A stretch of 64,000 nt of DNA from Ylistrum balloti (lineage: Eukaryota). Below the pieces are notes generated by a model. The model was not told where the DNA came from. It saw only the letters and a program-made list of their open reading frames with translations, and did no database searches. The position numbers and the translations under genes are program-made. The DNA lies in contig NW_026781975.1 in the NCBI RefSeq assembly GCF_031769215.1, positions 620,001 through 684,000 on the forward strand, read 5' to 3'. Positions 39,974 to 62,500 of the stretch are shown piece after piece (positions within the stretch are counted from its first letter, which is position 1; each line of letters opens with the position of its first letter).

Positions 39974-40547
39974 TCATGACAGAAGACTTCGGTCAAACAG
40001 GTAGAGCCCTAAATTTGGAGATGTGCTATCTTTAATCCTTTTCAAGCGAGCATGAATGTCAGCGATCTCTTTGATCTTCAGGTACTTCTGGTCCATACAT
40101 TCGTCCTCTAGAAAATGTTTCAGCTGAAAATATAAGATAAGAAACTTGAAAGAGCTCCTGCAAATCCTGCCTCTCGGAATGATAGGATCAAAGAAGTTGA
40201 TCTATATAAAACTCGTGTGCAACTACGACACGTAATTCAAATCTGGAACATTCGAATCAACAACATTTCCTCATATTATGCTTTGTGTTAGGTTATTGAT
40301 ATCATTGGCCATTATAACAAACATAATGAAGGAAGACAATTGTTTAGTCTTGCTCGGACTCGCGAGCTATGACACCAGATCACATAGCAAAGAAATTGCA
40401 GACTGCCTAGCCATTACACCGCCACGACTTCCCCAAAAAAGTATGTCTGGAAGTTGTACTATAATAGACAGCTAGAATTTTCTGGAGATGACAACATGAA
40501 CACAGTTGCAACTTGTCTAATTACGTGATATGAACACCTGGGTCGCA

Positions 40548-40587
<40 letters not shown>

Positions 40588-43500
40588 ATACGAATTATAC
40601 ATACAACACATATCAAACTCTGGTACAATTACGACAAGTAATCAAAAAAATAATAAAGCATATATGACACCTTTGACGTTATAAATACATGATACTACCC
40701 TAGTGTCTTAATTGTAAAAATGTAAGCTTCCTGAGTGTTGATCACTATCGACATGGCGTCAAAATGAGCGAGTGTTTCGCACAACTATAATGCAGGTTTG
40801 GTTTGCACGTGTATTTGTATATCGGACATTCATGTATTCTAAATCTCAAATTAACAAATTAGAACATTAATGAATTTGTGCACTCATGCCAAGGACTTTT
40901 CTTTGTCCAAATAGAGCGTACATGTACATGAAAACAATGTTTAGAGGCGTAAACAACACCGTGTTCAAGTTGTAGAAAACAATGTTTACATACAGGAGAA
41001 CAAATATTTCGAGGCGCACAAAACACCCTGTACATGTAAAAGAAAACACTGTTTCGAGACAGAAAACAATGTTTCGCGGCGCTCATAATACCGTGTACAT
41101 GTAGCAGAAAACATTGTTAAGAGGCGCACACAATACCGTGTACATGTAGCAGAAAACAATGTTTCGAGGCGCAAACAATACCCTGTACATGTAGGAGAAA
41201 GCAATGTTTCGAGACGCAAACAATACCGTGTACATGTAGCAGAAAACATTGTTAAGAGGCGCACACAATATCGTGTACATGTAGCAGAAAACAATGTTTC
41301 GAGGCGCAAACAATACCCTGTACATGTAGGAGAAAGCAATGTTTCGAGGCGCACACAATACCGTGTACATGTAGCAGAAAACATTATTTCGAGGCGCACA
41401 AAACACCCTGTTCATGTAAAGGAAAACACTGTTTCGAGGCAATCACAACCCGTGTACATGTAAAAGGAAACATTGTTTCGAGGCGCACAAAACACCCTGT
41501 ACATGTAAAGGAAAACACTGTTAGGAGACAGAAAACAATGTTTCGAGGCGCTCACAATACCGTGTACAAGTAGTAGAAAACAATGTTTCAAGGCAGAAAA
41601 CAATGTTTTGAGGCGCTCACAATACCGTGTACATGTAGCAGAAAACATTTCGAGGCCACAAAGCACCCTGTTCATGTAAAGGAAAACACTGTTTCGAGGC
41701 GCACAAACACCCTGTTCATGTAAAGGAAAGCACTGTTTCGAGGCGCACAAGCACCCTGTTCATGTAAAGGAAAACACTGTTTCGAGGCGCACAAGCACCC
41801 TGTTCCTGTAATGGAAAACACTGTTTCGAGGCGCACAAGCACCCTGTTCATGTAATGGAAAACACAGTTTCGAGGTGCACAAGCGCCCTGTTCATGTAAA
41901 GGAAAACACTGTTTCGAAGCAATCACAACCCGTGTACATGTAAAAGGAAACATTATTTCGAGGCTCACACAATATCATGTACATGTAGCAGAAAACATTG
42001 TTTTAAGGCACTCACAATAACAAATACTGTAGTGGAACTTAACAGAAAGCTGTAGTTAACTTATAAAATGCTAATTAGGGTTGCCACTGAAATATATAGC
42101 TGACAGAAGCCTTAAGACAAAGCGTAATCGTGTACTGAGATAATTAAAGCAGACTAACTTACATGTGGGAAGTCATTCGTAACCGCAGCATAGTGAGTTT
42201 TCTTGAGTAGGTTTAATCTATGCTTCTGGTCACCAAGAGCAAAGTCAATTACACTCATAACGTAACTCCATTCAGTTGCACCAGTATCGGCGCGTTCATA
42301 GCACTGCAAAAGAACTTCGACAGATGAAATAGGCCGGAAATCATATTAAATATTTAATGACTTTGGCTCATGTAAAGAAAGAAGTCAACATGCAATGTAC
42401 CAGTTCTGTAGTCGTTACACATCAAATTTAGTTTGAAACCAGCATCAATACATAGCATGCGATGTACATTTACAGTAAAACACATTTTATTGAACTGCAT
42501 AATTTTGTCCTGCAGCCTATACGACATTTTTTTCACTGCAAAACAAATCTGAAACTTCTTTTTATAACAGTAAATATTGATATTCTAAACTGTTTGAAAA
42601 CTGCCAGTCTATACCTCAAGGTATGACTAACCATTGTCTTTATGATTGTTTTAAACCATGTATCCATGATCGTTTTAAACCATGTATGTGGGTGTTTTGA
42701 CCTGTTTTCAATTTTTTTTATTCACATTTCGGTAAGAAATTTTTTGTCCACTTGTTGACCCTATAATGATCTGTTATGTGTTGATGGACCGTGAAGAATA
42801 TCATATTGTTAACTGTAACTCTAACCAGAAAAAAAACTAGTTACTCTCTTTATGACAATAAAATTTATCTCGTTATTACGACTTCAGCGATCTCGTTATG
42901 ACAATAAAATTTATATCGTTATTACGACTTCAGTGATCTCGTTATGACAATAAAATTTATATCGTTATTACGACTTCAGTGATCTCGTTATGACAATAAA
43001 ATTTATATCGTTATTACGACTTCAGTGATCTCGTTATGACAATAAAATTTATATCGTTATTACGACTTCAGTGATCTCGTTATGACAATAAAATTTATCT
43101 CGACTTTGATCTCGTTATGACAATAAAATTTATCTCGTTATTACGACTTTTTCGTTATGACAATAAAATTTATATCGTTATTACGACTTCAGTGATCTCG
43201 TTATGACAATAAAATTTATATCGTTATTACGACTTCAGTGATCTCGTTATGACAATAAAATTTATCTCGTTATTACGACTTCAGTGATCTCGTTATGACA
43301 ATAAAATTTATATCGTTATTACGACTTCAGTGATCTCGTTATGACAATAAAATTTATATCGTTATTACGACTTCAGTGATCTCGTTATGACAATAAAATT
43401 TATATCGTTATTACGACTTCAGTGATCTCGTTATGACAATAAAATTTATACCGTTATTAAGACTTCTTTTTGATTTTTTTGTCTTTATATTCTTTTTTGT

Positions 43501-46500
43501 TATTACGACTTCAGTGATCTCGTTATGACAATAAAATTTATATCGTTATTACGACTTCAGTGATCTCGTTATGACAATAAAATTTATATCGTTATTACGA
43601 CTCTCTCGTTATGACAATAAAATTTATCTCGTTATTACGACTTCAGTGATCTCGTTATGACAATAAAATTTATATCGTTATTACGACCTAAAAGATCTCG
43701 CTATGACAAAAAACTCGTTATTACGACTTAAGTGATCTCGTAATGACAAAAACGTTATCTCGTTATTACGAAATAGCTGGCTATCTCTTTCACTTTACAT
43801 GAACCATTTCCTTTTTACCTTTGATGCGTTCGCGCGTTTCGAGCCCTAACGTTAATCATTTCTTATAACTGTATGACACAGTATTCTTGTCATTCATAAT
43901 ACTGGTATATAAAATTACCCCGTAAACATGTGAGGCGATTTAATATTGTGGTTCTTTTTTTCAAATGGAAGATGCAGGCGGAATATATTAAAACCAGGTA
44001 AAAAATAAAAAACAATCACTTTTTTAAAACTATATGCGCTTTGAAGACATTGATAACATGATCAAGGCTGCCGTTAAATGTACTAGAGTTTGTCTATATT
44101 TTTGTGAAACTTTGAAGAAATTACTCTAGATTCTCGACTCCGTAAAACTGATAATGAATTATCCGGTCTCCATGGCAATACGTATGCTACCGGCGTAAAA
44201 TTGCACGCTCTCGGTCAACGATTAATGGAGTTTCTCAAGTCTCCGTTCAAAAAAGAAATGACAAAACGACTCTAACATAAAAAAATATAGCTTCCGTAAA
44301 AGGTCTACATACATATACAACTATTCACCAAAAACGATGTACAGAATAACTACATAAGTAATAGAGTATATAGAAATATTCTACTGTAAAATGCTGTTTA
44401 TTATCATCGCTTACAAACATTGTAATGGTTTTCATTTAGCTAGTTTTAAAATGTAACAGTAAATGAGAATTTATTTTATCTTCACTGTCGCTTTATAACA
44501 ATGTAATGAGTTTTTTTTAGTCAATCCATAGAAAACTATTTTTGAACAATGTACATAATTTTTCTCTAGTTCGGTCGGTGTCCTGCTGGTTATTAACGCT
44601 ATTGATGTTTTTTCTTATTTTTTACTAACAAACTATTTCTCCGGTTAACCTACCTGTGAAGATAGTTTCTTACTGGGATTAATAGAATGAAACTCGAAAG
44701 TCATCCCTCTCTGTATCATGTATAGCATGATTTTCTCTGCATTCTGTCGCTCCATCTCCGTGTAGGATCGGAACAATTTCTCGAAACCGGGAAGCGAGAT
44801 ATTGTGACGTGCGAAACAATAGGACTGAAACAGTTAAGCAATCATACAAATGTAAAATAAAGATAAAAGAAATAGAGGAGCGTTGTATGACTTCAAACAA
44901 TTCGATATATAGTCTAGTAGTACAGCTTATTGACAGTAAATCATTCATTGCAACCAGCCACTGAAGAACAGTATAGTGTCCGGCCAGAAATCAAAAGTTG
45001 TGAACTCCAGCGAGAGCACGACACTTTCCATTACTCTTTCCTATTATGCGTTTATCGACTATGTGTTAATTTGTGTCTTTTTATCACACACAGGTAGAAA
45101 CAGGTAGCTATTTACCACATCAATGAATATTAAACATATGCCAACGCATTCATATTTGTACATTTCACATTTAAATCGTAACGTCATATATAGAAAATAA
45201 AATAAGTACTTCAACAGTTAATGATACTGAAAACCAGCGTGCGTTGAACTACGATTTTATTTAATAGATATTCGGATATTCGAATATATGTTATATAACT
45301 TTCAAATTTTCTCACAAATGTAATACAACTGTAAAATTGTCAGCTACAATACGAAGCATAAATTTTGCGCACTGATACTTGTACCAGTCGCTGTTCATGT
45401 CAACACTCAAACTGTTGTTTCTCGACCTCGCAGTACAAATGTAATTAAATAATTGATAGACAAACATACTTGTTTAGGATAGTAGATTTACATAATGCAC
45501 AATATCCTGTACATTAGCTTATCTACTTATTTGAAGTATTCTGACAGTCATAACATAATAAATGCCAATACACTGGTTATGGCGAATGCTTCTGAAAGTT
45601 TACATTGGGCTATAAACATTAGTCTGTAAATTTTGACTTTGATAGTTGACATGAAAAAAATACATTACAATTGCCAGGTACGTGTAGTAGGACTGGAATG
45701 ACGTCTTGATGTTTTTGACCATAAAAGAACGTGCCTTCACCTCATCAAAGCCATAAAGTTCATTAGCTGGTTCAGGGTCTGTGTAAAGAATAAGACACGG
45801 GTAATGTGTGATCTGAATCGTCATATCAAGATGGCGAAAATAGATAACACACACAAACTCACAAATAATTCAGTCTGTTAGTGCACTCAAGTACGTTTCA
45901 TTCTTTTAGACAAAACCAGTTCAGCATTTTGTGAATGTTTATAATTTACTTATTGGAATAAAAACATCCTTTGACGAATTAAAAGAAATAATAACAGCAA
46001 ATAGATTTTTAAATCAGAAAGAAATATATTGGTATGATGCTTGCAAATGTGATCTCTTCTTATTCAATAAAACATTGTGAGGACGTCTCGAAACACAAGT
46101 GTATCATTAAGAAGTAGGGATAGAAGCAATGTTCGTGAAAATTGTGTTCAGAGATGCCCAACGGTGCTTCCTAGGTTTTCATGGGGATGATTCGTGAGTA
46201 AGTATGTAAAGACTTCTTGTGGCTTTTGGTTAGCTAATAATCCCTGCCGGTTATAATGATACTTTATATCATGATGCATTGTACTCAACCACCATTTTAT
46301 CTTAAGGATATTATGCGCACTGCTGTACCCATCTCTGTAACCTGGGACTTCATTATCAAGTTAAAAAATTTATTCAAAATCCGTGATGATTTAACTTGTT
46401 CTGTCGTGATCGAGGTAATTACATAGAAGTCACAATAAAAGTTTGGTAACTAAACTAGCTTGACCCGGCTGCTATGAGAAAGCTCTACCTGAGAGGTGAT

Positions 46501-47089
46501 GCATGCGTAATTTACTACAATTTGAATATTTTGTGAAAGATCGGTTAATGCATGTTTTACGTGAATTATTATAATGTGATCACGACATATTTGACGCCAG
46601 GGGTAAAGTTGGATATAAATCATTTTGCGAGTTCACACACAAAAGGAATATACAAATATATTGAAATACTAGGTGTATATTAGCAAAGTACCCAAACTAG
46701 TGTTTACATCTTACACGGTAATGACACGCGAATGTACAGTACAACGTATTACCCACATAAAACTTCCTACAACCCTTACATTGTACTGGGTTGATGTAAG
46801 CATCTTATTGACATAATCGTTCTACACGGTGATATTCTTTTTTAAATATCAGTACACGTCACTAAACACCCCGATTTTAATGTTCCTGCTATCATGTTTG
46901 ACACTTGTCATACGAAGTTAAATAAGCTGTAAGAAATACAAATGTACTGTTAATTTAACATGATATATACATCATAAACGTACCTGATTTGACTGGAGGC
47001 GGCACTTGTGGAGACTGACTATTGCCCGGCCCCACATACGTCAGCCACGCCAAAATCGACACCAACACACCCACTGAATACATCCTCAT
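39974..47089 (-). CDS. Secreted ferritin-family subunit with degenerate ferroxidase centre (light-chain-homologue-like), about 225 aa
   Basis: Five exons: 47089-46984 (MRMYSVGVLVSILAWLTYVGPGNSQSPQVPPPVKS), 45778-45669 (helix A, IKTSFQSYYTYLAI), 44824-44654 (SYCFARHNISLPGFEKLFRSYTEMERQNAEKIMLYMIQRG), 42303-42163 (EWSYVMSVIDFALGDQKHRLNLLKKTH...FPH), 40123-39974 (LKHFLEDECMDQKYLKIKEIADI...LGLYLFDRSLLS*). The frame is open and splice sites are canonical. A small extra exon in intron 3 cannot be excluded. Confidence 0.88.
40960..42010. repeat. About 45-bp minisatellite in intron 4 of the minus-strand ferritin
   Basis: Variants of gtttcgaggcgcacacaataccgtgtacatgtagcagaaaacaat. It explains the overlapping Cys-rich antisense ORFs. 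Confidence 0.95.
42852..43770. repeat. 46-bp minisatellite in intron 3 of the minus-strand ferritin
   Basis: Repeats of tcgttatgacaataaaatttatatcgttattacgacttcagtgatc. Confidence 0.96.
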
Positions 47090-47739
47090 GTTTAATTATC
47101 TGTTTCTATTATAATTGTTCTAATTAGTAACCGGTATACAGATAGGATAACTGTCTATCCCTGAAATACATTTGTACTATGACACGGAATAAACATACGA
47201 TAACAGTGTTATCTTTCTGAAGGTGCGTGCAACGTCAACATAATTGTACTTCTGTTCATCTACCGTATTATTCATAATAGTGTACTCCTCATTATACTCG
47301 ACCTTCTTAATCATGATATTGTTTCAATGATATACATAAACCCGACCTTATTTTTCTCGAATTTTATCATTTCAATATACTTCTCATAGTTTTATGATAT
47401 CATTTCAATATACCCCTCACCGCACAAGATTTTTTACTATATAATAAAATCATTTCAATGCACATGACCATTTATTTTCGCCCGTATTAGGATTTCAGTG
47501 TCTCTCCCGCAGTACCTGATGATTTTTTCCTTCAGTTTTCTTATGTATCCTCCGCTGTACCAATCCACTTTTTCTTGCATCACAGTTTCTAGCATCATGA
47601 CGTACTTATCTATTTTTTCCTCGTATTTCTCCCTCACTCTACCTATTTTCTTATTCTAATATTAGCATTTCAATGTTACCACCGCACTACCTGATCATTT
47701 TTCTCTAATTAGCCTTTCAATTATCCTCTTAGTACCTTA

Positions 47740-48335
47740 CCATTTCTTCCGTCTATTAGCGTTTCAAGCATCCTTTCAGGTCCTGACCATTTCTTCCTTG
47801 TATTAGCGTTTCAAGCATCCTCTCGGTGCCTAACCATTTCTTTCTTGTATTTGCGTTTCTAGCATCCTCTCAGTGCCTGACCATTTCTTTCTTGTATTAG
47901 CATTTCAAGCACCCTCTCAGTGCCTGACCATTTCTTCCTTGTATTAGCGTTTCTAGCATCCTGTCAGTGCCTGACCATTTCTTTCTTGTATTAGCGTTTC
48001 AAGCATCCTTTTAGGTCCTGACAAGTTCTTTCTTGTATTAGCGTTTCAAGCATATTCTCAGTTCCTGACAAGTTCTTCCTTGTATTAGCGTTTCAAGCAT
48101 CCTCTCAGTTCCTGATCATTTCTTCCTTGTATTAGCGTTTCAAGCACCCTCTCAGTGCCTGACCATTTCTTCTTTGTATTAGCGTTTCAAGCATTCTCTA
48201 AGTGCCTGCCCATTTCTTTCTTGTATTAGCGTTTCTAGCATCCTCTCAGTTTCTGACCATTTCCTCCTTGTATAAGCGTTTCAAGCCTCATCTCAGTGCT
48301 TGACCATTTCTTCCTTGTATTAGCGGTTGAAGTAC
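47740..48335. repeat. 47-bp minisatellite, about 12 copies, in the inter-ferritin spacer
   Basis: Variants of gaccatttcttccttgtattagcgtttcaagcatcctctcagtgcct. Confidence 0.95.
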
Positions 48336-48482
48336 CCGACCATTTTCTTCTCCCATATGGCCAATTCAGTGCAACCAATTATAATTTAAATTAATCATCA
48401 TTCTAACTCTCCTATCAAAATTTACGGAAGTTCGCCTCGTTTGCATCTTAACTGTTCCAGGGGTTACTAGCAATATCGCTCT

Positions 48483-48875
48483 CAGCACCCCTGGAACCAT
48501 CCTCGATACTCCAGGGACTACGATCACGATGGTTTTCTGTACCCCTGGAACCATCCTCGACACTCCAGGGACTACGATCACGATTGTTTTCTGTACCCTT
48601 GGAACCATCCTCGACACTCCAGGGACTACGATCACGATTGTTTTCTGTACCCTTGGAACCATCCTCGACACTCCAGGGACTACGATCACGATTGCTTTCT
48701 GTACCCCTGGAACCATCCTCGACACTCCAGGGACTACGATCACGATTGCCTTCTGTACCCCTGGAACCATCACGAATACTCCAGGGACTACGATCACGAT
48801 TGCTTTCTGTACCCCTGGAACCATCCTCGACACTCCAGGGACTACGATCACGATTGCTTTCTGTACCCCTGGAAC
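48483..48875. repeat. 54-bp minisatellite, about 7 copies, each with an internal hairpin
   Basis: Unit ctgtacccctggaaccatcctcgacactccagggactacgatcacgattgcttt; ccctgga and tccaggg are inverted within each unit. Confidence 0.96.
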
Positions 48876-49132
48876 ATTTCATGGCAAAATCGAAGATTCC
48901 ATGTGCGGCACCTTGTGGATTAGTCGATAAGACTGGTTTGTTCCCTTGATTTGCATCAAACAAATATCGAGGCCGCTTAACTGTATGTGGTAATGGCTTT
49001 GAAGTTGGGTGTCGCGCCTTTTTAATCTTCAAAGTCTGCGATTAGTCAGTTGTTTTTCCTCCTGAAACCAGCTCCAGACCAATAAAATCACTTCGCTTGT
49101 GCCAACAATTCGGCCATGAAATGTTCCAGGGG
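48866..49132. mobile_element. 267-bp MITE-like element with perfect 20-bp TIRs
   Basis: cccctggaacatttcatggc (48866-48885) is the exact reverse complement of gccatgaaatgttccagggg (49113-49132). No clear TSD was seen. Confidence 0.65.
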
Positions 49133-50281
49133 CAGTGAGAGCGATAGTGTATTGTAAGTTTCAACGGTCATGATATCATTATGTGTTCCGTGTAGTGCCG
49201 TATATGTTTTCATCTCATTAACTGTCGTTTCAAGTATCCAGCACACCTGTATAGAGCGCTATAACGAGCAACTACGGTACAAATCAAATGCGCATATGTG
49301 GTCATATCGAGGTCAATTATCATTAAGATATCACAGGTAAAACACCGGTTATCTAAATAAGTCGTATCTGATATATAATTCAGATCTCCATGAAACCATC
49401 TGATGTCAGAGTAATGATACTATTCACTGCATTATATGCGGTATATATTACATTGCATTCACATGAATAGTGGAAATTGTGGCGTTTGTTACATGTAGTT
49501 TGCTGCGTTTATCAACCTCTGAGCACCCAGTGTCATTTTGAGACGGCGTATCCTTGTAGTAGCTGGTGGCTACCTCGTTGAACAAAACTAGGGAGGCACT
49601 CCCATGACATCCAGATTAATTGATGTTAAGTGTCTTGTCCACTAACTGCCATACACCTGTGTCATGGGTAGGGTGTACCGAACCGCACACCTCGGATACG
49701 ATCTTTGCGTTTTCATTAACAAAATGAGCTATTGCGACAGCCGAAATCAAGGCGTATTTGAGGAATCTAATGTTTTTCAAGTAGCTTAATCGGTATTAAT
49801 GAATGCTGATATCAATTTCTTTTTTTAATTGAAAACTTTTCCACTACTTAGTGTTAAATAAAGATGGTATTCCTAATTAAAGTTCCTCGATTATTGACAA
49901 TTAAATAGATCAAAGATGATTTACATGTTATAATTCAGATATGTGATGGTAGGTTGTGTATACTGTGTATAAGTACGATGTTACGTTTTCAGTTGTCTAT
50001 CTTCTCTATTTGGTTTCATTCTGTTCGAGTATTTTCCTCCTAAAAGACGGTACTGTACTTCATCCACATCCCAATGGAACAAGACTATAGAATTAAAAGG
50101 AAATTCTAAGTAAAAATATCTGAAAATTATCGTCCGTCACTCAATTCTACAGTGTCCGTGAACGTTCGGCGTCTGATCTCTGTTACACTTAACCCAAAGT
50201 ATGATGTTAGAGTCATATTTGCAAGATAAATGTATCAGTGGGTAGATGTCAGAGGTTTTGTTAAACTATGCTATGTACTTG

Positions 50282-50427
50282 TATATATAAGTTATCGGTC
50301 AATGCTCGCACTGTTATCCTCATTCGTGATACAGTTACCTTGATCGTTACGCGCACCTGACAAGGTTCATACAGGCCGGGCATTATCAATAAATGATGAT
50401 AATCCATTGACATCATCATATCACGTG
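50282..50427 (+). promoter_or_regulatory. Candidate promoter motifs of the plus-strand ferritin: TATA-like tatatataa (50282-50290) and CACGTG E-box/HRE-like site (50422-50427)
   Basis: Motif matches 100-240 bp upstream of ATG 50525. They are short motifs that could be chance. Confidence 0.3.
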
Positions 50428-50524
50428 AGAGTCAAACTACGTTAGAGCTATCCAAGTCCACCAGTATCATTACAAAAACCGACGCCATTAGGCAAAAGAA
50501 ATCTATCGAACACACAACGAAGTT

Positions 50525-53500
50525 ATGAGGACGCTCATCATTTTTGTTTGCCTTTTGGCCTTTTGCTTTGCAAGTGAGTATCCAAGAAACAATGTTGATA
50601 TTTTGAATATCCTGCTCTTTTCTTTAAATTTCATATGTTCTATAAAATGACATTAACTCATTTCACGCGCGTTATTTGGCTTTCTGAATCCTGTTGAGAA
50701 TGAAATTCAATCTAGTAATTGAACTTTTCATATATTGTACAATGTTTGATATTATGTACACGAAACAAATTATGTCGTTTTTACCTTCGTTAAATGATAT
50801 CGTTGTAATTGTTTGTAATATCTAATAGATTTACAGAGTAAGCACCATAACATACTATCTTAACATGTCGGAAGTGAAACCAAGTCCTGACAGGGAAAGC
50901 GTTCCTTGTGGTATATTCGTCACTTCTGACGACCACCAAATATATATATATATATATACTTGGGCTATAAGTTAGGTAAAACCCACGTCTTAGTTTGGGA
51001 TTAATTTGATGTATTTTAGAAAAAAATATTCAATTAAATCTCAACAGGCTATACAGGAATGTGTTTAAAGTACGAAACTATACACTGTCAATATATCGTT
51101 TTAAAAAGACGTGGTAAAAAGCCATTCTAAACGTCTAGAACAAAAGTTTTACTTTAATTGGCTTTTATTAACAGATATGTCATTAAATCACCAACATTCA
51201 ACTTGACCAAGAAAATTAACTACATGAGATATAAACGACTTTCGCTGGATACAAAAATGTCACTATTGGTTATAGCTTACACGTTTTTAGTCACTGTAAC
51301 CGTGTTTGTGACCGTCTTCTCATGTCATTGACCGGACACAGAAGCTTGTTCTGAGGAAGTTCCTGCCACTCTTGCATCTTGTATCCGACAGAGTTCTACA
51401 CATGCGCAATCGGGATCATATCTGGTGGCATCTCTATCTTGTTGAAGATACTCTTGCAAAAGGCGGGCTCTGTGTGGTTTGTCATTGTTATTCATTAAGA
51501 TAGGACAACTGCGTATAAATGGGAATCGAAATGCGGAACAACTAAAGGTCGATCGCAGTATGTCTGTACATTTAAACTTTTATCAAGGACACGTAACCAA
51601 ACCTACATTTAAGATTAAAAAACATCCCCAGACTGTAACATCGCCACCATTATCTTATAGCATGCCATATTTCTTCAAACACGGAACTGCCTAATCAAAA
51701 CGTGACTTTCATCAGATCAATGGACACTTCGCCAAAACCTAAAAATGTCATGTTTGATGATCATGAGCCCATTGCAGTTTTGCTTGTTTGTGCCTTCCAA
51801 TCAACAAGGAACGTTGTACTGGTCAACGAGAGTAAAGTCGCCTGATGTTCAAACGTGTGTTGACGTCGGCTAATACAAACATTAACTTCCCACTATTCCC
51901 GAATCTGATGGCAGAGATGAACGGGGCTCGTTTTGCCTGCCAGAAGTCTTTCTTGTCAAATTGAAGTCTTCCGAGGTCTGCCATTCCTGGGACACTAGTC
52001 AACATGTGTGGTTTTGTTAAGACGATGCATTGACCGAGAAATAATGCAATGGCTGACATCAAAACGTGAAGTTTCTTTAGGTGACGACCTGAGCTTTGTT
52101 AGAGTACGGGACATTCCAGTTTAATACGGGTAATCGTTGTGTTATATGTATCTTTTTGTTGCATGCTGCATCAAACACAAAAGGAAACAGTGCAAAAAAA
52201 AAAAAAAAAAAAAACCAAAAGACAAAAAGAACAAAAATGCAAGGTTTATTTTTACATGAAATAAGTTTTGATTACAATTTTCATAATGAAATTGATTACG
52301 AATTGGTTACCAATGCACGAGGGAATATTTTTGTCACATTTATTTGACATAACCTGCCAATCTCCTTTCTTACGATAGTATATAATGTATACTATATTCT
52401 TTATTCATAGTTGGACCTGATTTAAACGACACAAATACACAAATTAACTTTTCCATTTGTAGGTTTATAAACAGGTGATTGCGTGTTACATATACAATAC
52501 ATCTACACTGTTATATATCACTTGGGTACTTTCTTCTAGTCAAACGACGGGAGCTAACTAAAAGACAACTCTTATTATCATATCGACTTAGGTTAACAAC
52601 ATCTAAATAAATCCTACTTGTAAAATACTAATTGCTTGGGTGTGACATACTTTATTATAAGCGAACAGGTGCACCTACATGTCACCTTTTAATTCATTCA
52701 AATAGTGGATTCGGAATATACACACATACTTGGCGTTCTTCTGAAATTACCAGATACTTGTATTTGAAAACTACGAAATTTATTGAATTAATATACACCA
52801 CAATTTATATACTGACATTTTTTTCCGATCACTATGTAGTCCTCATATGTTTCAAAATTTAGACAATGGGTGTCGCTGAAGCTGTAGTATGCAGTTTAAT
52901 TTGTTGTTTGGCTCTATGGTATCTAATTATAAATCTGTATTAAAAATTGCTATTTACTTGAGTATTGTTACAACTTACTATCTGTATTTATCCAAAGTAT
53001 GATTGAATAAAGTTTACATTTAATAAATACTGCAATGGTATTTCTTTGCTTTTAATAAAGGGCAGCCGACGAAAAATGTAGATACCGTTAGGGACCAATT
53101 TGTGGACACCAACATAGAACATGTGGTAAACCATATCAACAAGGAACAGTTAGCCAGCTACTTCTACCAGGCCTATGTAAGTATCTCATACAAATATAGA
53201 ATGATATATTAAACAACTAACAGCCAAAACTATAAGCAATTGTATCAATCATGACCTGCCAAATGGCAATGTTTTATTTATTCAAGTAGTGAATACACAT
53301 TCACAAGGAACTCATCAACATAGAACCATCATCATTTGTCATGAAGTATACCTTCACCAAAATTTACATCGCATGTGTCATCGATGAAGCAGAAGACGCT
53401 TACTTTTCCAAAACACTTTGTCTTATTCTTTTTCAGGGGTTTCCGTGTAAATCTTTCTTTTGTTCATATTTCACCCTTGTTTTATGGAATTTGAGTTTGA

Positions 53501-56500
53501 ATTATGATTATGTTGCTATGTTGGTATTTTCTTGATTTTTTCATCAACTTCTTCATTCATTTCCTCTGACAAAGGTCATGGGCATTAAAGAAAGCATCGC
53601 TGTTGTTTTCATTGTACTTTCTCCTTAGAGGCCATTTAAATTTCGCTGTCGTGAATTTTTTTTACTTGTTTCATCGATTTTCACTAAGAATTACAAATAG
53701 ATATGAATCAAAGTGTCACACTAAGGAAACCTGCCATAATTTGTTCAGCCCAAAGGCTTGTATCAACGAAGACTAGCATTCCTTTAAGCACTGAAATAAC
53801 TGATATTTGCCATAGAAATCGAAGCAGTAGGTTATCTATTACAGAGTAAATTTTTCAAGCGTGGCGATATTGCTTTGGATGGCTTTGCCAAGTGGTTTTC
53901 TGCAGCGGCTAAAGAAGAAAATGATCATGCCGAGAAACTGATGAATTACCTCAATATGAGAGGAGGAGAGGTTGACCTCAATACCATTACAGTAAGGACT
54001 GCTAGTGCACACAATTTTTTAGAAAACGAATTTTCAATCCTGTTCGGTATTCTTTTCTTTAAACTAGAAAAGAAGAATGAAACATATCTTTAGGATCTAA
54101 ATATTCATCTGATCGTATAGCTCAAAGTCAGCTAAATAAAACCGATTCAAGACTTTCTTTGATATATTGAAAACGTAACACTATGCATGAATTAACGTGA
54201 ATGTCGGTTATACAACCTAATCGATAAAAGACAATTGATGTTCATAATCTACACTTATTTTACAATATTGTTATAACTCACATATTGTTGTTGGATCAAT
54301 GAAATGTTTTTTCTTATATTTCAAAGCTTCAAGATGTGTGCGACACAGTGTCAACAAAGCTGGCGGATTTTCCACAATTCAACAGACAGGAAGCCTGTGT
54401 AAGTCGAATTAACATCAGTAGAAAGTCGAAACAAGCCCATAATGCTCTCGACATATCTCGTATATGTGCGATGCATAAATTTACTTTTTGCTCAGGAAGA
54501 CATTATCAGTATTACGTACACACATACATATAAATCATATTTCAAAAGCATAAACGCTCTATAAAGCAATTCAAGCAAGTCTCCGTTTAATCGGTTTAAT
54601 GAGCTTATACGTTTGTTATGGATTATACAGTTGTAACTCATATAACATAAGTTTATTTTACAGCTAAGCTAGCTGTGAATAAAAGGAATAGTAAATGTAC
54701 ATATAACAAGTTTATTAAGCTATTCCTGCTGAAACTTTTCTTAGCTAGCTATAGGTGTTTACCGACGAATTTGTAACAACTTGTTAACCTACTTTCGGCG
54801 CAGTTATGATAGTGTATCCTTACTCCGAATAAAAAAAAAAAACCAAACAATTTTGATAATCAAATAACTTTTTTCCGTCCCATGGTATAATCACATATTT
54901 AAAACATATTTCCCGATTCTTATCCCTATCCCGCTATCATTTTTGAAGCTTATTTCCTGTTTCTTACCATTATCCCGCACGCCTGTGAAAAAAATTATTT
55001 CCTGTGTCTTACCCTTATCCCACACGTATGTTTAAAGCTTATTTCCTGTTTATTACCCTTATTCCGCACGCAAGTTTAAAGCTTATTTTCCGTTTCTTAC
55101 CCTATCCCGCACGCAAGTTTAAAATATATTTTCTGTTCCTTACTCTTTCCCGCACGCATGTGTAAAGCTTATTTCCTGTTTCTTACCGTTATCTCACACG
55201 CACATTTAAAGCATATTTCCAAGTAATGTATCGTTGATTTGTTATTCTCTTATGCTTTTGATCTACGAGAGCTGATGATAAGGTAATAGCCTCATATTAA
55301 AACTTTGACTTTTAGCTGACATATTGCATTGTTTTTCAACATGGTACCTTTCAGTATCTATACACTTTTGTCAGCGATGTTTAAGGGCCTCATTTCCACT
55401 TTTAAAGTTCTTTTCTCGAATGTTCAAAAAGTTCTCCACTGCATGAATGACATCATCATCTGACCGAAAGTAGGTATTGGAAATCGTCTTTTTCAACTAT
55501 GGAAATAGACGAAAGTCTGATGGAGCGATATCAGAAGAATAAGGCGGATGCTCAATTAAATCAAAGCCACAATCGTTCATGGCAGCTGTGACAACCACAG
55601 ATTTGTGAACAGGGGCATTGTCCTGGTCAAACAACACTTCTTTACTGACCTTTCGCAGCGCCTTAGTTTGATATTTTCTCTTAATTGCCTTTGAGGTGAT
55701 GCATAATATGTGTCATTGATTGTTTGACCCTTTTGCAGATAATTTAATGTATCCCGGAAAACTGAGGCCATAACCTTTCCAGATGATGGAACAGTCTTTG
55801 CCTTCTTTGGTGGGAGTGAACCAGAGTGTTTTCATTGTTTAGACTGTGGTGGGCCTCTTGGGTAAAATGGTGGACCCATGTTTCCTCCATAGTCACAAAC
55901 CTGCGCAGAAATTTAGCAGGATCTGCCTCAAAAGGATTCATATTAGCACGTGGCAACGTCCACCCGGTGTGCTTCTGATCTAGAAACAAGATCTTAAATC
56001 CGTAAGAACGAAATGTGCTCTTTGGTGTGGAATCCCAACTGTACTGAGTAAATCTCTATATAATGTACTTCACTGACCATTTCTGGGGAGGCAACAGTGA
56101 CAGGCCTTCCAGGACAGGCGTAATCCCCAAGGTCTGCGTACTACGCATAAATTCCGCCACCCACCATTTCACTGTAACATATGAATAGGCACCACACCCT
56201 GGTGTTGCTACCATATCAGTAAGGATGTCCTTAGGTGATATACCTTTCTTATACAAATATTAAATCACTGCTCTTTCAGCTGTTTTGTCCACTTCGAAAT
56301 TTCACTTGCCTTGTTTACTTTAGAGTTCTGCATTGTCGACATGAAGTGATCAAATGACACAAGTCTTCGGCTACACAGCTTTTAAGGGTCAGGAAATAGT
56401 TGAAAAAGGATATCCCTGCTCAACTCCTTCAAAATTTGCCAACCACGTTTGTTCTTTGTGCTGAATTCCCCATTTTTACTTTTCTTATTGTAGATTTGCA

Positions 56501-57338
56501 ACTTTATGTCGAGAGAAAAAAGTCATTCAGATGCGACATGTTCGGTATGTATGTAATGATGAAGTCATATGTATGTTTACCAGATGTGTTTTTCTATAAT
56601 TAATATTTAATTTACCAGTATGTACTTGGAAAACATGATGATAAAACCCCATTTCTAAAGATATAATAATTTCAATAAATTGCAAAATTTATGTAATTAA
56701 ACAACGTACATGATATATCAATATAAAATAGACGACATGACATGCTTTGCAAGTAAAACAGAAGAGAATGCAAACTCCCGAATATTTAAACGTGCAAGTT
56801 AAAATAGTGTATATAACTAGCATAATAATGTAAACATGATACACTGTATATTTATAGCCGCACGAAGTCTAATTGACAACGTATTTGAGTGGTATTTCAC
56901 TAATGTTTGTAGAAGGATCACAGTACGTGGTTTTCGGGGCTCCAAGCTATGCAAGACTCCTTAGTGCTTGAAAGATATGTCAACGATCAACTTCTTGATC
57001 TCCACAAAAATACATCAAGCGACCCTCACGTAAGTGGCTAAAATGATAGGACCACAATTGTAAGATAAATGCAGGTTAAAGACGGCGTAAGGCAATTCTT
57101 GTCAACAAGAACGAGAAACATCACAATTTTGTTTGAATTAGAACCTGGCATTGAATACATTGCTACATCCGATACATTATCGATACTATGTATTTGTTGA
57201 CAGCTGAGTCACATGTTGGAGCACGATTTCCTTGATGAACAGATTGATTCCATTAAAACATATGGCGACTACATCACGATCCTTACTCGTGTGGGAGCAG
57301 GTATTGGCGAATATGAGTTCGACAAAAGTCTTCAATGA
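50525..57338 (+). CDS. Secreted ferritin (yolk-ferritin type, Cys-rich BC-loop insertion) with intact ferroxidase centre, 228 aa
   Basis: Seven exons: 50525-50573 (signal MRTLIIFVCLLAFCFA), 53061-53176 (HINKEQLASYFY), 53845-53991 (AKEENDHAEKLMNYLNMRGG), 54327-54398, 56494-56544, 56913-57029 (SLVLERYVNDQLLDLH...DPH), 57204-57338 (LEHDFLDEQIDSIK...GIGEYEFDKSLQ*), 687 nt in total. Equivalents of human H-chain E27, Y34, E61, E62, H65, E107 and Q141 are all present. AATAAA occurs downstream near 57507 and 57581. Confidence 0.94.
51290..52130 (-). mobile_element. Decayed Tc1 element in intron 1 of the plus-strand ferritin
   Basis: Minus-strand remnants GRPRKTS, WRSVH*SDESH, GGDVTVWGC and MPPDMIPIAHV*, with stops and frameshifts. 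Boundaries are approximate. Confidence 0.8.
54900..55222. repeat. About 46-bp degenerate minisatellite in intron 4 of the plus-strand ferritin
   Basis: Variants of tttaaagcttatttcctgtttcttacccttatcccgcacgc. Confidence 0.88.
55266..56365 (-). mobile_element. Decayed mariner (DD34D) transposon
   Basis: Remnants KGISPKDI...SYVTVKWWVAEF, FVTMEETWVHHF, YLQKGQTINDTYY and HPPYSSDIAPSDFRLFP*LK. The terminal repeat begins ta-cgagagctgatgataagg at 55264. Confidence 0.9.
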
Positions 57339-59518: not shown

Positions 59519-62500
59519 ATGCTTGTCCAAAGAACACTTCTGGTAAATGTACTGTCAATGACAGTTTCGTGCATATATGCCAGCGGTAAGTTGTAAACCA
59601 ATACATTTTTTCTCTGAATATAAATTTGATTTAAAATATCCTTATATTATTAAATCATAAGACAATACATATATGTAATAAATAAAAACAAGCCAACCTG
59701 TCAATCTGTTTGATATAAAATTTATCATTGATATGTATTATTGCAAGTGTATACAAATGTAGGTTGCTGTATACTATATATATATATATATACTGTGCAT
59801 ATTGTATGAGAGATGTGTGAGAGTTATCTCCCTTTATTTGGTTTTCCTTTTTTTCCCTTTCTGTGTTTAGAAATTCACTTTTATTTCAAATTATATAATT
59901 TATATCATTGCTCTAAAACTTGGTTAACTTTGGCTTCGTGGGAAGAATTTATATAGGCTTTGCCTGTTATTCAATCCACATTGACTGTACCATCTTTGTC
60001 AATAAAATTTGTTGAAATAAAAATAAAGTAAGACCTACTATGACTGGCAGAATTCACCTTCCAAAGTGCTCTTCGGACTATTTATATATGTGTAGTTAAA
60101 CTTGTAGATACTAAGTGAATCGAGTCAATAATTGAAGCATCATCACAACACGGAAAATATTTTCTTCTAATGTTAGTGGAACATAACATTTTCCGTATTG
60201 ACATCATTATTCAGTTAGGAACACAAATACCTAAACATTTGGTCAGTTTATGTCGAAGAGGCAGCACTATAAAGTAAACAAGGCAAGTGACTTTTGCAAA
60301 ATGAACGAAACCGCTGAAAGAGTTGTGATATAATATTTGGAAGCACCCTTGTTCACCCCCGCCAACGGAAGGCAAATACTGTTCTACCAGCGTGAAATGT
60401 TATTGGCTCTGTTTTCTGGGATACTAATGGTATTCTGATGTACGGTTATCTGCAAACGGGACAAGCAATCAATGACACATATTATGTATCACTTAACTCA
60501 GACTCAAGTCTGTCATTGCCATGGCTGCCATTAGAATTGTAACTTTGAATTGATTGAGCGCCTGTCATATTCTTCTGTTCTCACTCAATCAGACTTTCAT
60601 CTATTTTCAAAATTAAATATACGCGGTGGAGGACTTTCTGAACAGTAAAAAACAGGACTGTTGAAAAAGTGGCATTGGGGCCCTTAAACATTGCTGGCAA
60701 AAGTGTATAGATACTGAACGGGATATTGTTTAAAAAATAAAGCAATATGTCCACCAAAAGTCAAACCATTAAATATGAGGCTCTCAACTTATGAATCAGC
60801 CCCCGTATCTATGTCACAGTAAGCAGATATAAGGGTTTTGTAATACAAATTAAATCATTATGAATGCAGCAGTTTCGTGAATTCGTCCAATATGATATTT
60901 GAACAAGCGTTTGTCAATAATCCACAACCTTTTAGTCGTTCTCTGGAAAGGGCCAATTAAACCTCATGGAAACCTGATTTCAAATAAAAATTATGAATTG
61001 TTATTACAAAGCGATGTAGTAATATCTTACTAGACACAGAAATTAAACAAGAGACCCAATAGTTCTGCAGCGCTCACCTGGTATATATATACCAATCAAA
61101 TACCATAGCTCTAAGCATTTTAGTTTCATTTAAATGTTTTAACAAGTTTGACCTTAAATATTATTTAATGATATTTGTCGGTCTCTATTTGGGAACATAC
61201 CAGCCAAATATCATGCCTTTAGGTCTTTCAGTTTGACCCCTTTGACCTTGAATATAAGTCAAGGTCATTTCTTTCCGAGAACTTTGTCGGGCTTCATCCA
61301 AAACAGCCAAATATCAAAACATTTGGTCCATTGGATATTGAGAAGAAGTTGTTTTCAGGATGAAGGTGATATCTCACTATGGACGGACGGACGGCCGGAC
61401 GACGGACGACGGACGCCGCGCCATGGCATAAGTTCACTTGGCCCTACGGGGCAGGTGAGCTAAAAAAATGTTTTTAACCAAAATCTTCCATAACCAGGGC
61501 CCCGATACAACATATCAGTGCCTTAGTACAGTAACAAAGTGATGCACTCATGTCTTCGATATTTTCACCAAAATGTTAATATTTTATAAGGCACAATTAT
61601 CTAATTGGAAACAAAAATACATGTCATAAACTTGGCTTTCTCCCCATAAGATCCTTTGAATAAACTCCAAGAAAAGATACAAAATATCAGTATTCTTGTG
61701 TAATTATGTGATGTACAAATGTCAACACTTGCAACAAAAATTGAAAACTAACTCGATACGGATGAAGTTCTATTAATGTTTAATGAAATGTAGAGATTTA
61801 TCGGAATTCTACGAACTCGTGAGTTCATTTGTTATGTCGTTATAGTTTATTAAAAGCGTTTAAACCCCATTTGTCTTATCTTCAGTTCTTGAAACCCATT
61901 GTTTTTCATCTTCAGCTGTATCCAATATAACTGAAATTTATGAATAAAACGTAGAATGTCCTAACAATCATCTAGAGGTCAAGTCATCCTTATGATACCG
62001 ATTTTCACCACAGAGTTATTTTCACAAGCTTTGTAATCAGATTAAAATATTCACGTTTGTTTTACGTAACAGGATTGACGTCAGAGGAACTCGGTTATTT
62101 CCAAACAACTGGTAGATACAATGCTACTGTATCCATCAACGAACAAACGGATCGGTAAGAACCAGGAACGTAAGGAAAGGGTATTTAATTGATAAACACC
62201 GTGCTGATGTTACATACATAACAACGTGACAATGGCATAGAAAAATACCAGAAAACATGTTGTATAACAAACAAAGCAAACATGGTGGTTCTGTTGTTCA
62301 TCTTGGTCTCATTTGAGAATGTAATATCACTTTGATTGACCACCATTTACATGGAGGGTGTCTATGAAGCAGAAATATTTGTAAAGTTTTAGTTTATTAA
62401 TCGTTTAGTTCATATGTCGGCATTTTTCATTACACAGTAGTGTAAATCGCATCCTCTGATCAGCATTTTGTGTTCTGGAAATATTCATACACAAACTTAA

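What the first reader, a model, noticed from the sequence alone, without database searches (positions are those of the whole stretch)
39974..57338. Head-to-head pair of secreted ferritins, one catalytic and one ferroxidase-degenerate: a possible molluscan counterpart of the insect HCH/LCH system
Seen: two signal-peptide ferritin genes are divergently transcribed, with ATGs 3.4 kb apart (47089 and 50525). They share three intron positions: phase 1 in the N-terminal region after the signal peptide, phase 0 after helix A (QAY|S versus LAI|S), and phase 0 at DPH|L versus FPH|L. This points to an old inverted duplication, yet the proteins are highly divergent. One has 7/7 ferroxidase residues and the other 2/7. 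Established: insect secreted ferritin is a heteropolymer of HCH (catalytic) and LCH (non-catalytic) chains whose genes lie head-to-head, as with Drosophila Fer1HCH/Fer2LCH. Inference: this locus may encode a co-regulated, heteropolymeric secreted ferritin in a bivalve, either convergent with or ancestrally related to the insect system. Secreted ferritin subunits are known from molluscs, so the novelty would lie in the gene pairing and co-assembly.
Basis: partly seen in the sequence, partly recalled or inferred. Interest (0 to 1): 0.85.

Follow-up and report, generated by a model that had tools for sequence, protein, structure and literature searches.

The report
Conserved head-to-head secreted ferritin gene pair
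A scallop genome carries two back-to-back genes for secreted ferritins, one an acidic iron-oxidising subunit and the other a basic subunit with a dead active site; the same pairing is kept in mussels and an oyster, which suggests but does not prove a two-subunit blood or yolk ferritin like that of insects.

Summary
The window is Ylistrum balloti (saucer scallop). The plus-strand gene A (50525-57338) is the RefSeq 'yolk ferritin-like' protein (228 aa). The minus-strand gene B (47089/47083-39974) is 'soma ferritin-like' (219 aa). Their ATGs are 3.4 kb apart, both have a signal-peptide first exon, and the ferroxidase residues are 7/7 versus 2/7.

The pair is not scallop-specific. The divergent arrangement is also present in Mizuhopecten, Argopecten, Pecten, three Mytilus assemblies (CDS gap about 310 bp) and Ostrea. 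It is absent or rearranged in Solemya, Mercenaria, Elysia and Pomacea. The partners form one clade. All have lost E27, E61 and H65. They evolve under purifying selection (omega about 0.25-0.37) and still fold as ferritin. Their cores are neutral to basic, whereas the 46 other ferritins compared are all acidic.

Two secreted ferritin subunits were already cloned from Yesso scallop in 2014, so the genes are known. I found no report of the conserved pairing or of the split between a catalytic acidic subunit and a dead basic one. Co-assembly, co-expression and any relationship to insect HCH/LCH remain untested. The scan had flagged gene B once before, on this same DNA.

The parts
50525..50573 (+). 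Gene A exon 1: start codon and signal peptide (16 codons plus 1 nt), phase-1 donor GTGAGT
   Evidence: protein P0007 threads exactly
53061..53176 (+). Gene A exon 2: N-terminal extension and helix A (holds E27 and Y34), ends QAY|
53845..53991 (+). Gene A exon 3: helix B with E61, E62 and H65 (KEENDHAEK)
   Evidence: Pfam PF00210 E 2.9e-10; PDB ferritins E 8e-12
54327..54398 (+).
   Evidence: exact threading of P0007; insertion conserved in bivalve orthologues
56494..56544 (+).
56913..57029 (+). Gene A exon 6: helix C with E107, ends DPH|
57204..57338 (+). Gene A exon 7: helices D and E with Q141, and the stop codon
46984..47089 (-). Gene B exon 1: two in-frame ATGs (47089; 47083 used by RefSeq), signal peptide, phase-1 donor GTACGT
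45669..45778 (-). Gene B exon 2: helix A with E27 replaced by S, Y34 kept. Two candidate acceptors 12 nt apart: 45778, or 45766 as in RefSeq
   Evidence: the Argopecten protein P0005 keeps the equivalent of the longer form
44654..44824 (-). Gene B exon 3: helix B with E61 to M and H65 to N, E62 kept
   Evidence: Pfam PF00210 E 1.5e-4; PDB ferritins E 7.5e-7; 100% match to P0001
42163..42303 (-). Gene B exon 4: scallop-specific loop extension (QCYER) and helix C with E107 to Q, ends FPH|
39974..40123 (-). Gene B exon 5: helices D and E with Q141 to K, and the stop codon
47090..50524 (.). Intergenic region between the two start codons (3435 bp), holding two minisatellites (47708-48332 and 48487-48875)
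50312..50524 (+). About 200 bp just upstream of the gene A ATG, conserved among scallops (73-75% identity); holds a TCACGTGA E-box and a TATTGATAA GATA-like site shared by all four scallops
47148..47277 (-). About 100-130 bp upstream of the gene B ATG, conserved among scallops (67-76% identity)

Best explanation
The locus is an old, conserved, divergently transcribed pair of secreted ferritin genes.

Gene A is the bivalve orthologue of molluscan yolk (secreted) ferritin. It is an acidic subunit (core pI about 4.9) with a complete ferroxidase centre and a 41-aa four-cysteine insertion in the B-C loop.

Gene B is a fast-evolving but constrained paralogue. It keeps the ferritin fold and a signal peptide, has lost three of the metal ligands (E27, E61, H65) in every species examined, and has turned neutral to basic (core pI about 9.0 in this scallop).

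Most likely mechanism (inferred, not shown): both chains enter the endoplasmic reticulum of the same cells and co-assemble into a mixed 24-mer. A supplies iron oxidation. B acts as a non-catalytic partner that tunes cage charge, stability or receptor recognition. This would be a functional analogue of vertebrate H/L and insect HCH/LCH ferritin.

The gene arrangement, the loss of the active site, the charge shift, the fold prediction and purifying selection are shown here. Co-expression and co-assembly are inference.
For: Gene models and identity.

Head-to-head partner in other species:
- Mizuhopecten, 222 aa partner, gap 3.6 kb;
- Argopecten, 221 aa, gap 1.45 kb;
- Pecten;
- three Mytilus assemblies, 211 aa, gap 307-312 bp;
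- Ostrea, 215 aa, gap 2.5 kb.
My Mytilus and Ostrea partner models reproduce the annotated protein lengths with intron phases 1, 0, 0, 0. The Mytilus model is the top-ranked solution. The Ostrea model is the second-ranked one, chosen by hand for its intron phases and intact signal peptide.

The B partners form one clade (100/97), and Mytilus plus Ostrea still pair when the scallop rows are removed.

Ferroxidase residues: all 14 bivalve A proteins and all six named gastropod yolk-ferritin-like proteins score 7/7. The six B proteins score 2-3/7 and always lack E27, E61 and H65.

Net core charge: -2 to -14 in the 46 other ferritins in the set; -1 to +10 in the six B proteins.

Selection on B: omega 0.25-0.37 between scallops.

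Fold of B: AlphaFold2 mean pLDDT 85 with helices A-E. Foldseek target-normalised TM-score 0.89-0.90 to oyster, shrimp and human ferritins.

Context from papers: native secreted ferritin purified from chiton contains four secretory subunits, and its authors raise heteromeric cages as a possibility. A similar pairing arose again in Pomacea, a 7/7 copy next to a 3/7 copy with pI 7.9. That recurrence fits a general advantage of pairing catalytic and non-catalytic secreted chains.
Against: There is no expression data for this species and no protein-level data for any bivalve pair.

In scallops the two start codons are 1.4-4.7 kb apart. Only the roughly 100-200 bp next to each ATG is conserved, and no 7-8-mer is shared between the two sides. 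A single bidirectional promoter is therefore credible only for Mytilus.

The arrangement is not universal in bivalves. Solemya and Mercenaria have the second ferritin in another orientation or further away.

B has no specific sequence or fold similarity to insect light-chain homologues. Its best solved-structure matches are ordinary cytosolic ferritins.

B lacks the cysteine loop of A, and its own cysteines are not conserved outside scallops, so an insect-style inter-subunit disulfide is not evident.

Synonymous divergence (dS) exceeds 1, so the omega values are rough.
Confidence: 0.5

Rival explanations
1. B works on its own, not as a partner of A. In this reading it is a secreted, non-iron-oxidising ferritin-fold protein with another role. 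Candidates are an immune or acute-phase iron or metal binder, a carrier recognised by a receptor, or a structural or shell-associated protein. The adjacency to A would be a leftover of the duplication, kept by shared enhancers or by chance.
For: The basic charge and the loss of three metal ligands make B unlike any iron-storing subunit in the set.

The scallop promoter-proximal blocks are separate and share no motif.

The 2014 scallop paper is titled as concerning 'immune defense' (reference list).

Linkage is broken or re-oriented in Solemya, Mercenaria and Elysia.
Against: The divergent arrangement has been kept across three pteriomorph orders. In Mytilus the gap is only about 310 bp, which is hard to explain without a regulatory or dosage link.

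B keeps the full five-helix ferritin subunit fold, including helix E, and twelve columns that are invariant across all 42 aligned ferritins.

A basic homopolymer would be poorly suited to mineralising iron, yet nothing else in the sequence suggests a new activity.
Confidence: 0.3
2. The bivalve A/B pair and the insect HCH/LCH pair descend from one ancestral protostome head-to-head secreted-ferritin locus. This would mean true orthology rather than convergence.
For: Insect HCH and LCH1 genes lie head-to-head (PMC5751084).

Published trees place molluscan secreted ferritins with insect secreted ferritins, with 96% bootstrap in PMC10799875. The chiton preprint shows a common 'secretory' clade.

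In my tree B branches outside the clade that joins bivalve A with gastropod yolk ferritins, which allows an old split.
Against: No insect sequence could be included here, so this reading was not tested.

The AU test does not reject a duplication inside bivalves (p 0.335). B's deep placement is the kind of result long-branch attraction produces.

The protobranch Solemya, the heterodont Mercenaria and two gastropods lack the divergent arrangement.

Pomacea shows that a degenerate copy can arise independently.
Confidence: 0.1
3. B is a decaying duplicate, in effect a pseudogene or a gene drifting without function.
For: B evolves about twice as fast as A at the protein level. Between Ylistrum and Argopecten, dN is 0.295 for B against 0.133 for A. 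B has lost most catalytic residues.
Against: The reading frame is intact with canonical splice sites in at least six genera separated by hundreds of millions of years.

Omega is well below 1.

Orthologue protein records exist, at least one of them apparently assembled from transcripts.

The same three ligand losses and the charge shift are shared across the clade.

The fold prediction is confident.
Confidence: 0.03

Closest known systems
Molluscan yolk (secreted) ferritin: Lymnaea stagnalis yolk ferritin, Biomphalaria glabrata yolk ferritin, chiton secretory ferritins
   Same: Gene A has a signal peptide and a roughly 40-aa non-helical insertion in the B-C loop. No iron-responsive element (IRE) was detected. 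It sits inside the clade joining bivalve and gastropod 'yolk ferritin-like' proteins (100/95). These are the hallmarks listed for yolk ferritin in PMC10799875, PMC6351634 and the chiton preprint.
   Different: PMC6351634 states that secreted-type ferritins have their metal-binding residues replaced. Here that holds for B and not for A. All 14 bivalve A proteins and all six named gastropod proteins sampled keep 7/7. B has the signal peptide but not the 40-aa insertion: the extension is 13 aa in scallops and absent in Mytilus and Ostrea.
Insect secreted ferritin: Fer1HCH/Fer2LCH of Drosophila and HCH/LCH1 of Aedes, a 12+12 heteropolymer
   Same: In both cases two signal-peptide ferritin genes lie head-to-head, one with a ferroxidase centre and one without (PMC5751084; PMC4508113 abstract).
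   Different: Co-assembly is not shown for the bivalve pair. No IRE was found near the catalytic gene, whereas the insect HCH transcript has one. B shows no specific similarity to insect LCH in the structure searches. The basic charge of B and the cysteine-rich loop found only in A have no described insect counterpart that I know of. Orthology was not tested.
The two secreted ferritin subunits of Yesso scallop (Sun et al. 2014, Fish Shellfish Immunol 37:53) and the secretory subunits of Crassostrea gigas (Huan et al. 2014, Gene 546:80)
   Same: P0004 (UniProt W5U1X7, 216 aa, 62% identical to B) and P0009 (228 aa, 75% identical to A) are Mizuhopecten proteins. By length and species they are most likely the subunits those authors cloned. 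[quoted passage not shown]
   Different: Neither paper is held in the library, so I could not see whether gene linkage, orientation, loss of the active site or charge were described there. No paper in the searchable library links 'head-to-head', 'ferritin' and 'bivalve'.
Vertebrate ferritin H and L chains
   Same: The division of labour is the same: a catalytic chain and a non-catalytic chain on one fold. B matches L-chain models about as well as H-chain models (TM by hit 0.88).
   Different: Vertebrate H and L chains are cytosolic and both acidic. As far as I recall they are also unlinked and IRE-regulated, which I did not check here. B is secreted, basic and adjacent to its putative partner.

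Membership tests
Eukaryotic ferritin subunit (Pfam PF00210) | Sequence match to the ferritin-like domain | tested here: met
   Exon 3 of A scores E 2.9e-10 and exon 3 of B scores E 1.5e-4 (22.2 bits, just under the 24.5 cut-off for that piece alone). Full-length P0001 and P0007 carry PF00210 in the precomputed table. P0001 matches PDB ferritins at E 8e-19.
Eukaryotic ferritin subunit (Pfam PF00210) | Four-helix bundle plus a short C-terminal helix E | tested here: met
   The AlphaFold2 model of B has mean pLDDT 85 and helices at 43-71, 78-104, 134-165, 169-201 and 206-218. Foldseek target-normalised TM-score is 0.89-0.90 to C. gigas, shrimp and human H ferritins. A was not modelled.
Eukaryotic ferritin subunit (Pfam PF00210) | Di-iron ferroxidase centre (E27, Y34, E61, E62, H65, E107, Q141), which defines H-type chains | tested here: met
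   Met for A (7/7). Not met for B (2/7 in scallops, 3/7 in Mytilus and Ostrea). B is therefore not an H-type chain.
Eukaryotic ferritin subunit (Pfam PF00210) | Assembly into a 24-subunit cage | not testable with these tools
   No multimer prediction and no experimental data are available here.
Molluscan yolk/secreted ferritin | N-terminal signal peptide | tested here: met
   In both genes the first exon encodes a short charged start, an 11-13-residue hydrophobic core and a small-residue cleavage context. This was judged by eye and hydropathy, without a dedicated predictor.
Molluscan yolk/secreted ferritin | Insertion of about 40 aa in the B-C loop | tested here: met
   Met for A: 41 aa with four Cys, on two mini-exons. 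Not met for B: a 13-aa extension in scallops and none in Mytilus or Ostrea.
Molluscan yolk/secreted ferritin | No iron-responsive element in the 5' UTR | tested here: inconclusive
   No Rfam match at E up to 1 in 46000-51500, both strands. The transcription start sites are not mapped, so a UTR exon outside that range cannot be excluded.
Molluscan yolk/secreted ferritin | Placement in the yolk-ferritin clade | tested here: met
   A lies inside the bivalve plus gastropod clade (100/95). B lies outside it as sister with 94/59 support, and that position is unstable when rows are removed. For B the result is inconclusive.
Insect-type HCH/LCH secreted heteropolymer system | Two secreted ferritin genes in head-to-head orientation | tested here: met
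   Seen in the window and in eight further assemblies of six genera.
Insect-type HCH/LCH secreted heteropolymer system | One catalytic and one non-catalytic chain | tested here: met
Insect-type HCH/LCH secreted heteropolymer system | Obligate co-assembly of the two chains (1:1, disulfide-stabilised dimers) | not testable with these tools
   No protein data. The cysteines of B are not conserved between scallops, Mytilus and Ostrea.
Insect-type HCH/LCH secreted heteropolymer system | Common descent with insect HCH and LCH | not tested
   No insect ferritin sequence was returned by any search. Sequences from memory were not used.

The most novel reading that the evidence does not exclude
The divergent pair of a catalytic and a non-catalytic secreted ferritin gene is an ancestral protostome locus. 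On this reading, bivalve A/B and insect HCH/LCH are orthologous pairs kept head-to-head for more than 500 million years because the two chains must be made in fixed proportion for one heteropolymeric circulating ferritin.
Probability: 0.1. Interest if true: 0.8.

Novelty: new variant of a known kind. Interest (0 to 1): 0.55.

Why it matters
How invertebrates move iron through blood and into eggs is well worked out only in insects. There, a secreted ferritin is built from a catalytic and a non-catalytic chain whose genes sit head-to-head.

A second animal group with the same gene layout and the same division into an active and a dead chain gives two things. First, it provides a natural replicate for asking why secreted ferritins need two chains and why their genes stay together. 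Second, it gives a concrete candidate composition for bivalve haemolymph and yolk ferritin.

The unusual basic charge of the dead chain is a testable handle. It predicts charge-complementary A-B dimers and cages with altered surface or cavity charge.

Practically, studies that treat 'ferritin' expression in scallops, mussels and oysters as an immune or metal-stress marker should distinguish these two secreted genes from each other and from the cytosolic ones.

Tried and rejected
1. A spliced protein has no reference in these tools. I therefore searched exon 3 of B alone against the 1.84-billion representative library. It returned only the window's own protein, one 4001-aa oddity and a fragment, because the scallop orthologues share B's 50% cluster. 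This says nothing about rarity.

2. A profile mixing B proteins with A's exons (A1) was used only to retrieve identifiers. Its E-values for A-type proteins are inflated by construction and are not used as evidence.

3. My first unconstrained exon-chain search gave wrong models for everything except Mytilus, and a second attempt timed out. The final Ostrea and Pomacea partner models come from anchored searches constrained by the annotated protein length. The Pomacea loop insertion remains uncertain. The Mizuhopecten proteins did not thread exactly onto the genome, presumably because of allelic differences, so they were left out of the dN/dS calculation.

4. A look-up for the Pomacea yolk ferritin returned only short contigs about 1.1 kb long from assemblies of sequencing runs. 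The genomic context came from its paralogue.

5. Sun et al. 2014 could not be opened, and Huan et al. 2014 is not in the library.

6. The search for shared promoter motifs between the A and B sides found none. Counts of MRE, ARE, HRE and GATA consensus hits were unremarkable, and I draw nothing from them.

7. Full-length B against PDB and Swiss-Prot models ranked ordinary cytosolic ferritins first. Insect ferritin did not appear in the lists shown, so I found no specific insect-LCH resemblance. A ranking of this kind is not a phylogeny.

8. The pseudogene reading was considered and rejected (see rivals).


Full report
**What is in the window**

Six-frame reading and splice-site inspection show two intact ferritin genes on opposite strands, transcribed away from each other.

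The minus-strand gene (B) starts at 47089, with a second in-frame ATG at 47083. It runs through five exons to a stop codon ending at 39974. The plus-strand gene (A) starts at 50525 and its stop codon ends at 57338. Every intron I modelled is GT-AG.

Exon 3 of each gene matches Pfam PF00210 and solved ferritin structures.

A search with B's exon 3 returned a 219-aa protein identical over that exon. It is RefSeq XP_060063949.1, 'soma ferritin-like' of Ylistrum balloti, the saucer scallop. The contig look-up returned the window's own locus, with a 228-aa ferritin as the divergent neighbour. That neighbour is P0007, 'yolk ferritin-like' of Ylistrum balloti.

- The ATG distance (3436 bp), the orientation and the three shared intron positions and phases are correct.
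- A fourth phase-0 intron in the B-C loop is also shared.
- The ferroxidase count is correct. A keeps all seven residues. B keeps only Y34 and E62.
- The correction concerns gene A. Exact threading of P0007 onto the window gives seven exons.
- That insertion is conserved in all bivalve orthologues. It is the hallmark of molluscan yolk or secreted ferritin (PMC10799875; PMC6351634; chiton preprint).
The Argopecten protein P0005 keeps the longer form, so both acceptors may be used.

**Is the pairing conserved?**

A ferritin gene lies head-to-head with the yolk-ferritin orthologue in each of the following.

| Species | Partner length | Gap between CDS starts |
|---|---|---|
| Mizuhopecten yessoensis | 222 aa | 3.6 kb |
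| Argopecten irradians | 221 aa | 1.45 kb |
| Pecten maximus | 211 aa | 4.7 kb |
| Mytilus (three assemblies) | 211 aa | 307-312 bp |
| Ostrea edulis | 215 aa | 2.5 kb |

In scallops a YHYH-domain gene follows downstream of A, as it does in the window.

The arrangement is not universal.
- Solemya has a DEK_C gene upstream and a second ferritin in tandem downstream.
- Mercenaria has a second ferritin tail-to-tail about 9 kb away, with another gene in between.
- Elysia has no ferritin neighbour within 10 kb.
- Pomacea has two ferritin genes in tandem.

An HMM scan of those loci found no unannotated ferritin exons. The divergent pair is therefore shown for three pteriomorph orders: scallops, mussels and oysters.

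**Are the partners the same gene?**

I rebuilt the Mytilus and Ostrea partners from the loci. Both models reproduce the annotated lengths, have a signal-peptide first exon and show the same intron phases as B. The Mytilus model was the top-ranked solution. The Ostrea model was the second-ranked solution, which I chose by hand for its intron phases and intact signal peptide.

In a 52-sequence maximum-likelihood tree, the four scallop B proteins, Mytilus B and Ostrea B form one clade (100/97). The Mytilus-Ostrea pairing survives removal of the scallop rows.

All six lack E27, E61 and H65 and keep Y34 and E62. They also share a K-x-F-[IL]-[ED]-D motif at the start of helix D. Synteny, tree and shared derived residues therefore agree on orthology.

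**Where B comes from is less clear**

B is sister to the clade joining bivalve A with gastropod yolk ferritins, but only at 94/59. An AU test does not reject a duplication within bivalves (p 0.335). With some rows removed, B's position relative to cytosolic ferritins is unresolved. Long branches are involved throughout.

The shared phase-1 intron after the signal exon and the adjacency favour a local duplication of a secreted ancestor. I believe the other shared intron positions are general to animal ferritin genes. That is my own knowledge and was not tested here.

**Properties of B**

It is not decaying. The reading frame is intact in six genera and omega between scallops is 0.25-0.37. dS exceeds 1, so those values are rough. 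B's dN is about twice that of A.

An AlphaFold2 model has mean pLDDT 85 with helices A to E. It superposes on oyster, shrimp and human ferritins with a target-normalised TM-score of 0.89-0.90.

The most striking new feature is charge.
- The 46 other ferritins in the set, from plants, vertebrates, cytosolic molluscan forms and the yolk type, have a net negative core (-2 to -14, pI 4.8-6.1).
- The six B proteins range from -1 to +10 (pI 6.7-9.7).
- The Ylistrum pair reads pI about 4.9 for A against about 9.0 for B.
- The independently degenerate Pomacea copy (3/7 ligands) is also near neutral (pI 7.9).

**What this suggests**

A basic chain without a ferroxidase centre is a poor candidate for an iron-storing homopolymer. 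An acidic catalytic chain and a basic dead chain, both secreted and encoded side by side, fit co-assembly. On that reading B would be a non-catalytic partner.

Supporting context is indirect.
- Native secreted ferritin from chiton radula holds four secretory subunits, and its authors raise heteromeric cages as a possibility.
- The recurrence of a catalytic plus degenerate pair in Pomacea points to a general advantage.

Against it:
- There is no expression or protein evidence.
- The scallop promoters appear separate. Only the 100-200 bp next to each ATG is conserved, and the two sides share no motif.
- The A side carries a conserved TCACGTGA E-box and a GATA-like site, and the B side carries neither.
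- No iron-responsive element was found.

I put co-assembly at about one half. An independent role for B is the main rival.

**Relation to what is known**

Gene A is a member of the known molluscan yolk/secreted ferritin family, and in bivalves it keeps a complete active site.

Two secreted ferritin subunits were reported from Yesso scallop in 2014 and secretory subunits from Pacific oyster in 2014 (citations seen). P0004 and P0009 are most likely those scallop proteins. I could not read either paper.

No paper in the searchable library connects head-to-head ferritin genes with bivalves.

The insect HCH/LCH system shares the layout and the division of labour. Common descent could not be tested, because no insect sequence was obtainable through the tools and I did not use sequences from memory.

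**Verdict**

The pairing is real, old and constrained, and B is a conserved dead and basic subunit. Heteropolymer formation, co-regulation and any link to insects remain open.

The finding is a new variant of a known kind of system. It is of moderate interest to iron and invertebrate biologists and can be tested directly with existing RNA-seq data and simple protein biochemistry.

Noticed in passing
window 54327-54398 and 56494-56544 (+): The two mini-exons for the Cys-rich loop of gene A are both phase 0 and multiples of three (72 and 51 nt). Skipping them leaves an in-frame 187-aa ferritin without the insertion, so an insertion-less isoform is possible. A 180-aa Mytilus record (P0024) is a shortened form of the Mytilus A protein.
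   Followed up: partly
window 55497-55989 (-), inside the 56-kb-side intron of gene A: ORF fragments there resemble a mariner/Tc1-type transposase (for example the motif HPPYSSDIAPSDF), so the intron probably holds a decayed transposon.
   Followed up: no
window 40925-42019, 42845-43771, 47708-48332, 48487-48875, 54894-55220: There are five minisatellite arrays with periods of 44-54 nt (about 7 to 22 copies). Two lie in intron 4 of gene B, two in the intergenic spacer and one in an intron of gene A. The long repeat-derived ORFs in the ORF list come from these arrays.
   Followed up: partly
L014 15954-19906 (+), Pomacea canaliculata CM009762.1: A second yolk-ferritin-type gene lies in tandem 2.5 kb downstream of a 7/7 copy. 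It keeps a long loop insertion but has only 3/7 ferroxidase residues and a near-neutral core. This looks like an independent origin of a catalytic plus degenerate secreted pair. My exon model for its insertion is uncertain.
   Followed up: partly
L010 23700-24563 (-), Mercenaria mercenaria CM038767.1: A 213-aa ferritin lies tail-to-tail about 9 kb from the yolk-ferritin orthologue. Its last two exons resemble the Mercenaria A gene closely, but Q141 is replaced by P. Only part of the gene lies in the fetched locus.
   Followed up: no
protein P0002: A 4001-aa predicted protein matches B's exon 3 at three separate stretches (E 1e-13), which suggests repeated ferritin-like domains in one very long product. 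Its origin is unknown.
   Followed up: no
window 59519-64000 (+); L002 21221-26892; L003 25720-29433: A YHYH-domain gene (PF14240) follows gene A downstream in Ylistrum (earlier scan note), Mizuhopecten and Argopecten. The conserved block in scallops is therefore B, A, YHYH.
   Followed up: partly
window 50312-50524 (+): Upstream of the gene A ATG, all four scallops share a palindromic TCACGTGA E-box, a TATTGATAA site and a 13-nt block (ACAGTTACCTTG). These are candidate regulatory elements. None of them occurs on the gene B side.
   Followed up: partly
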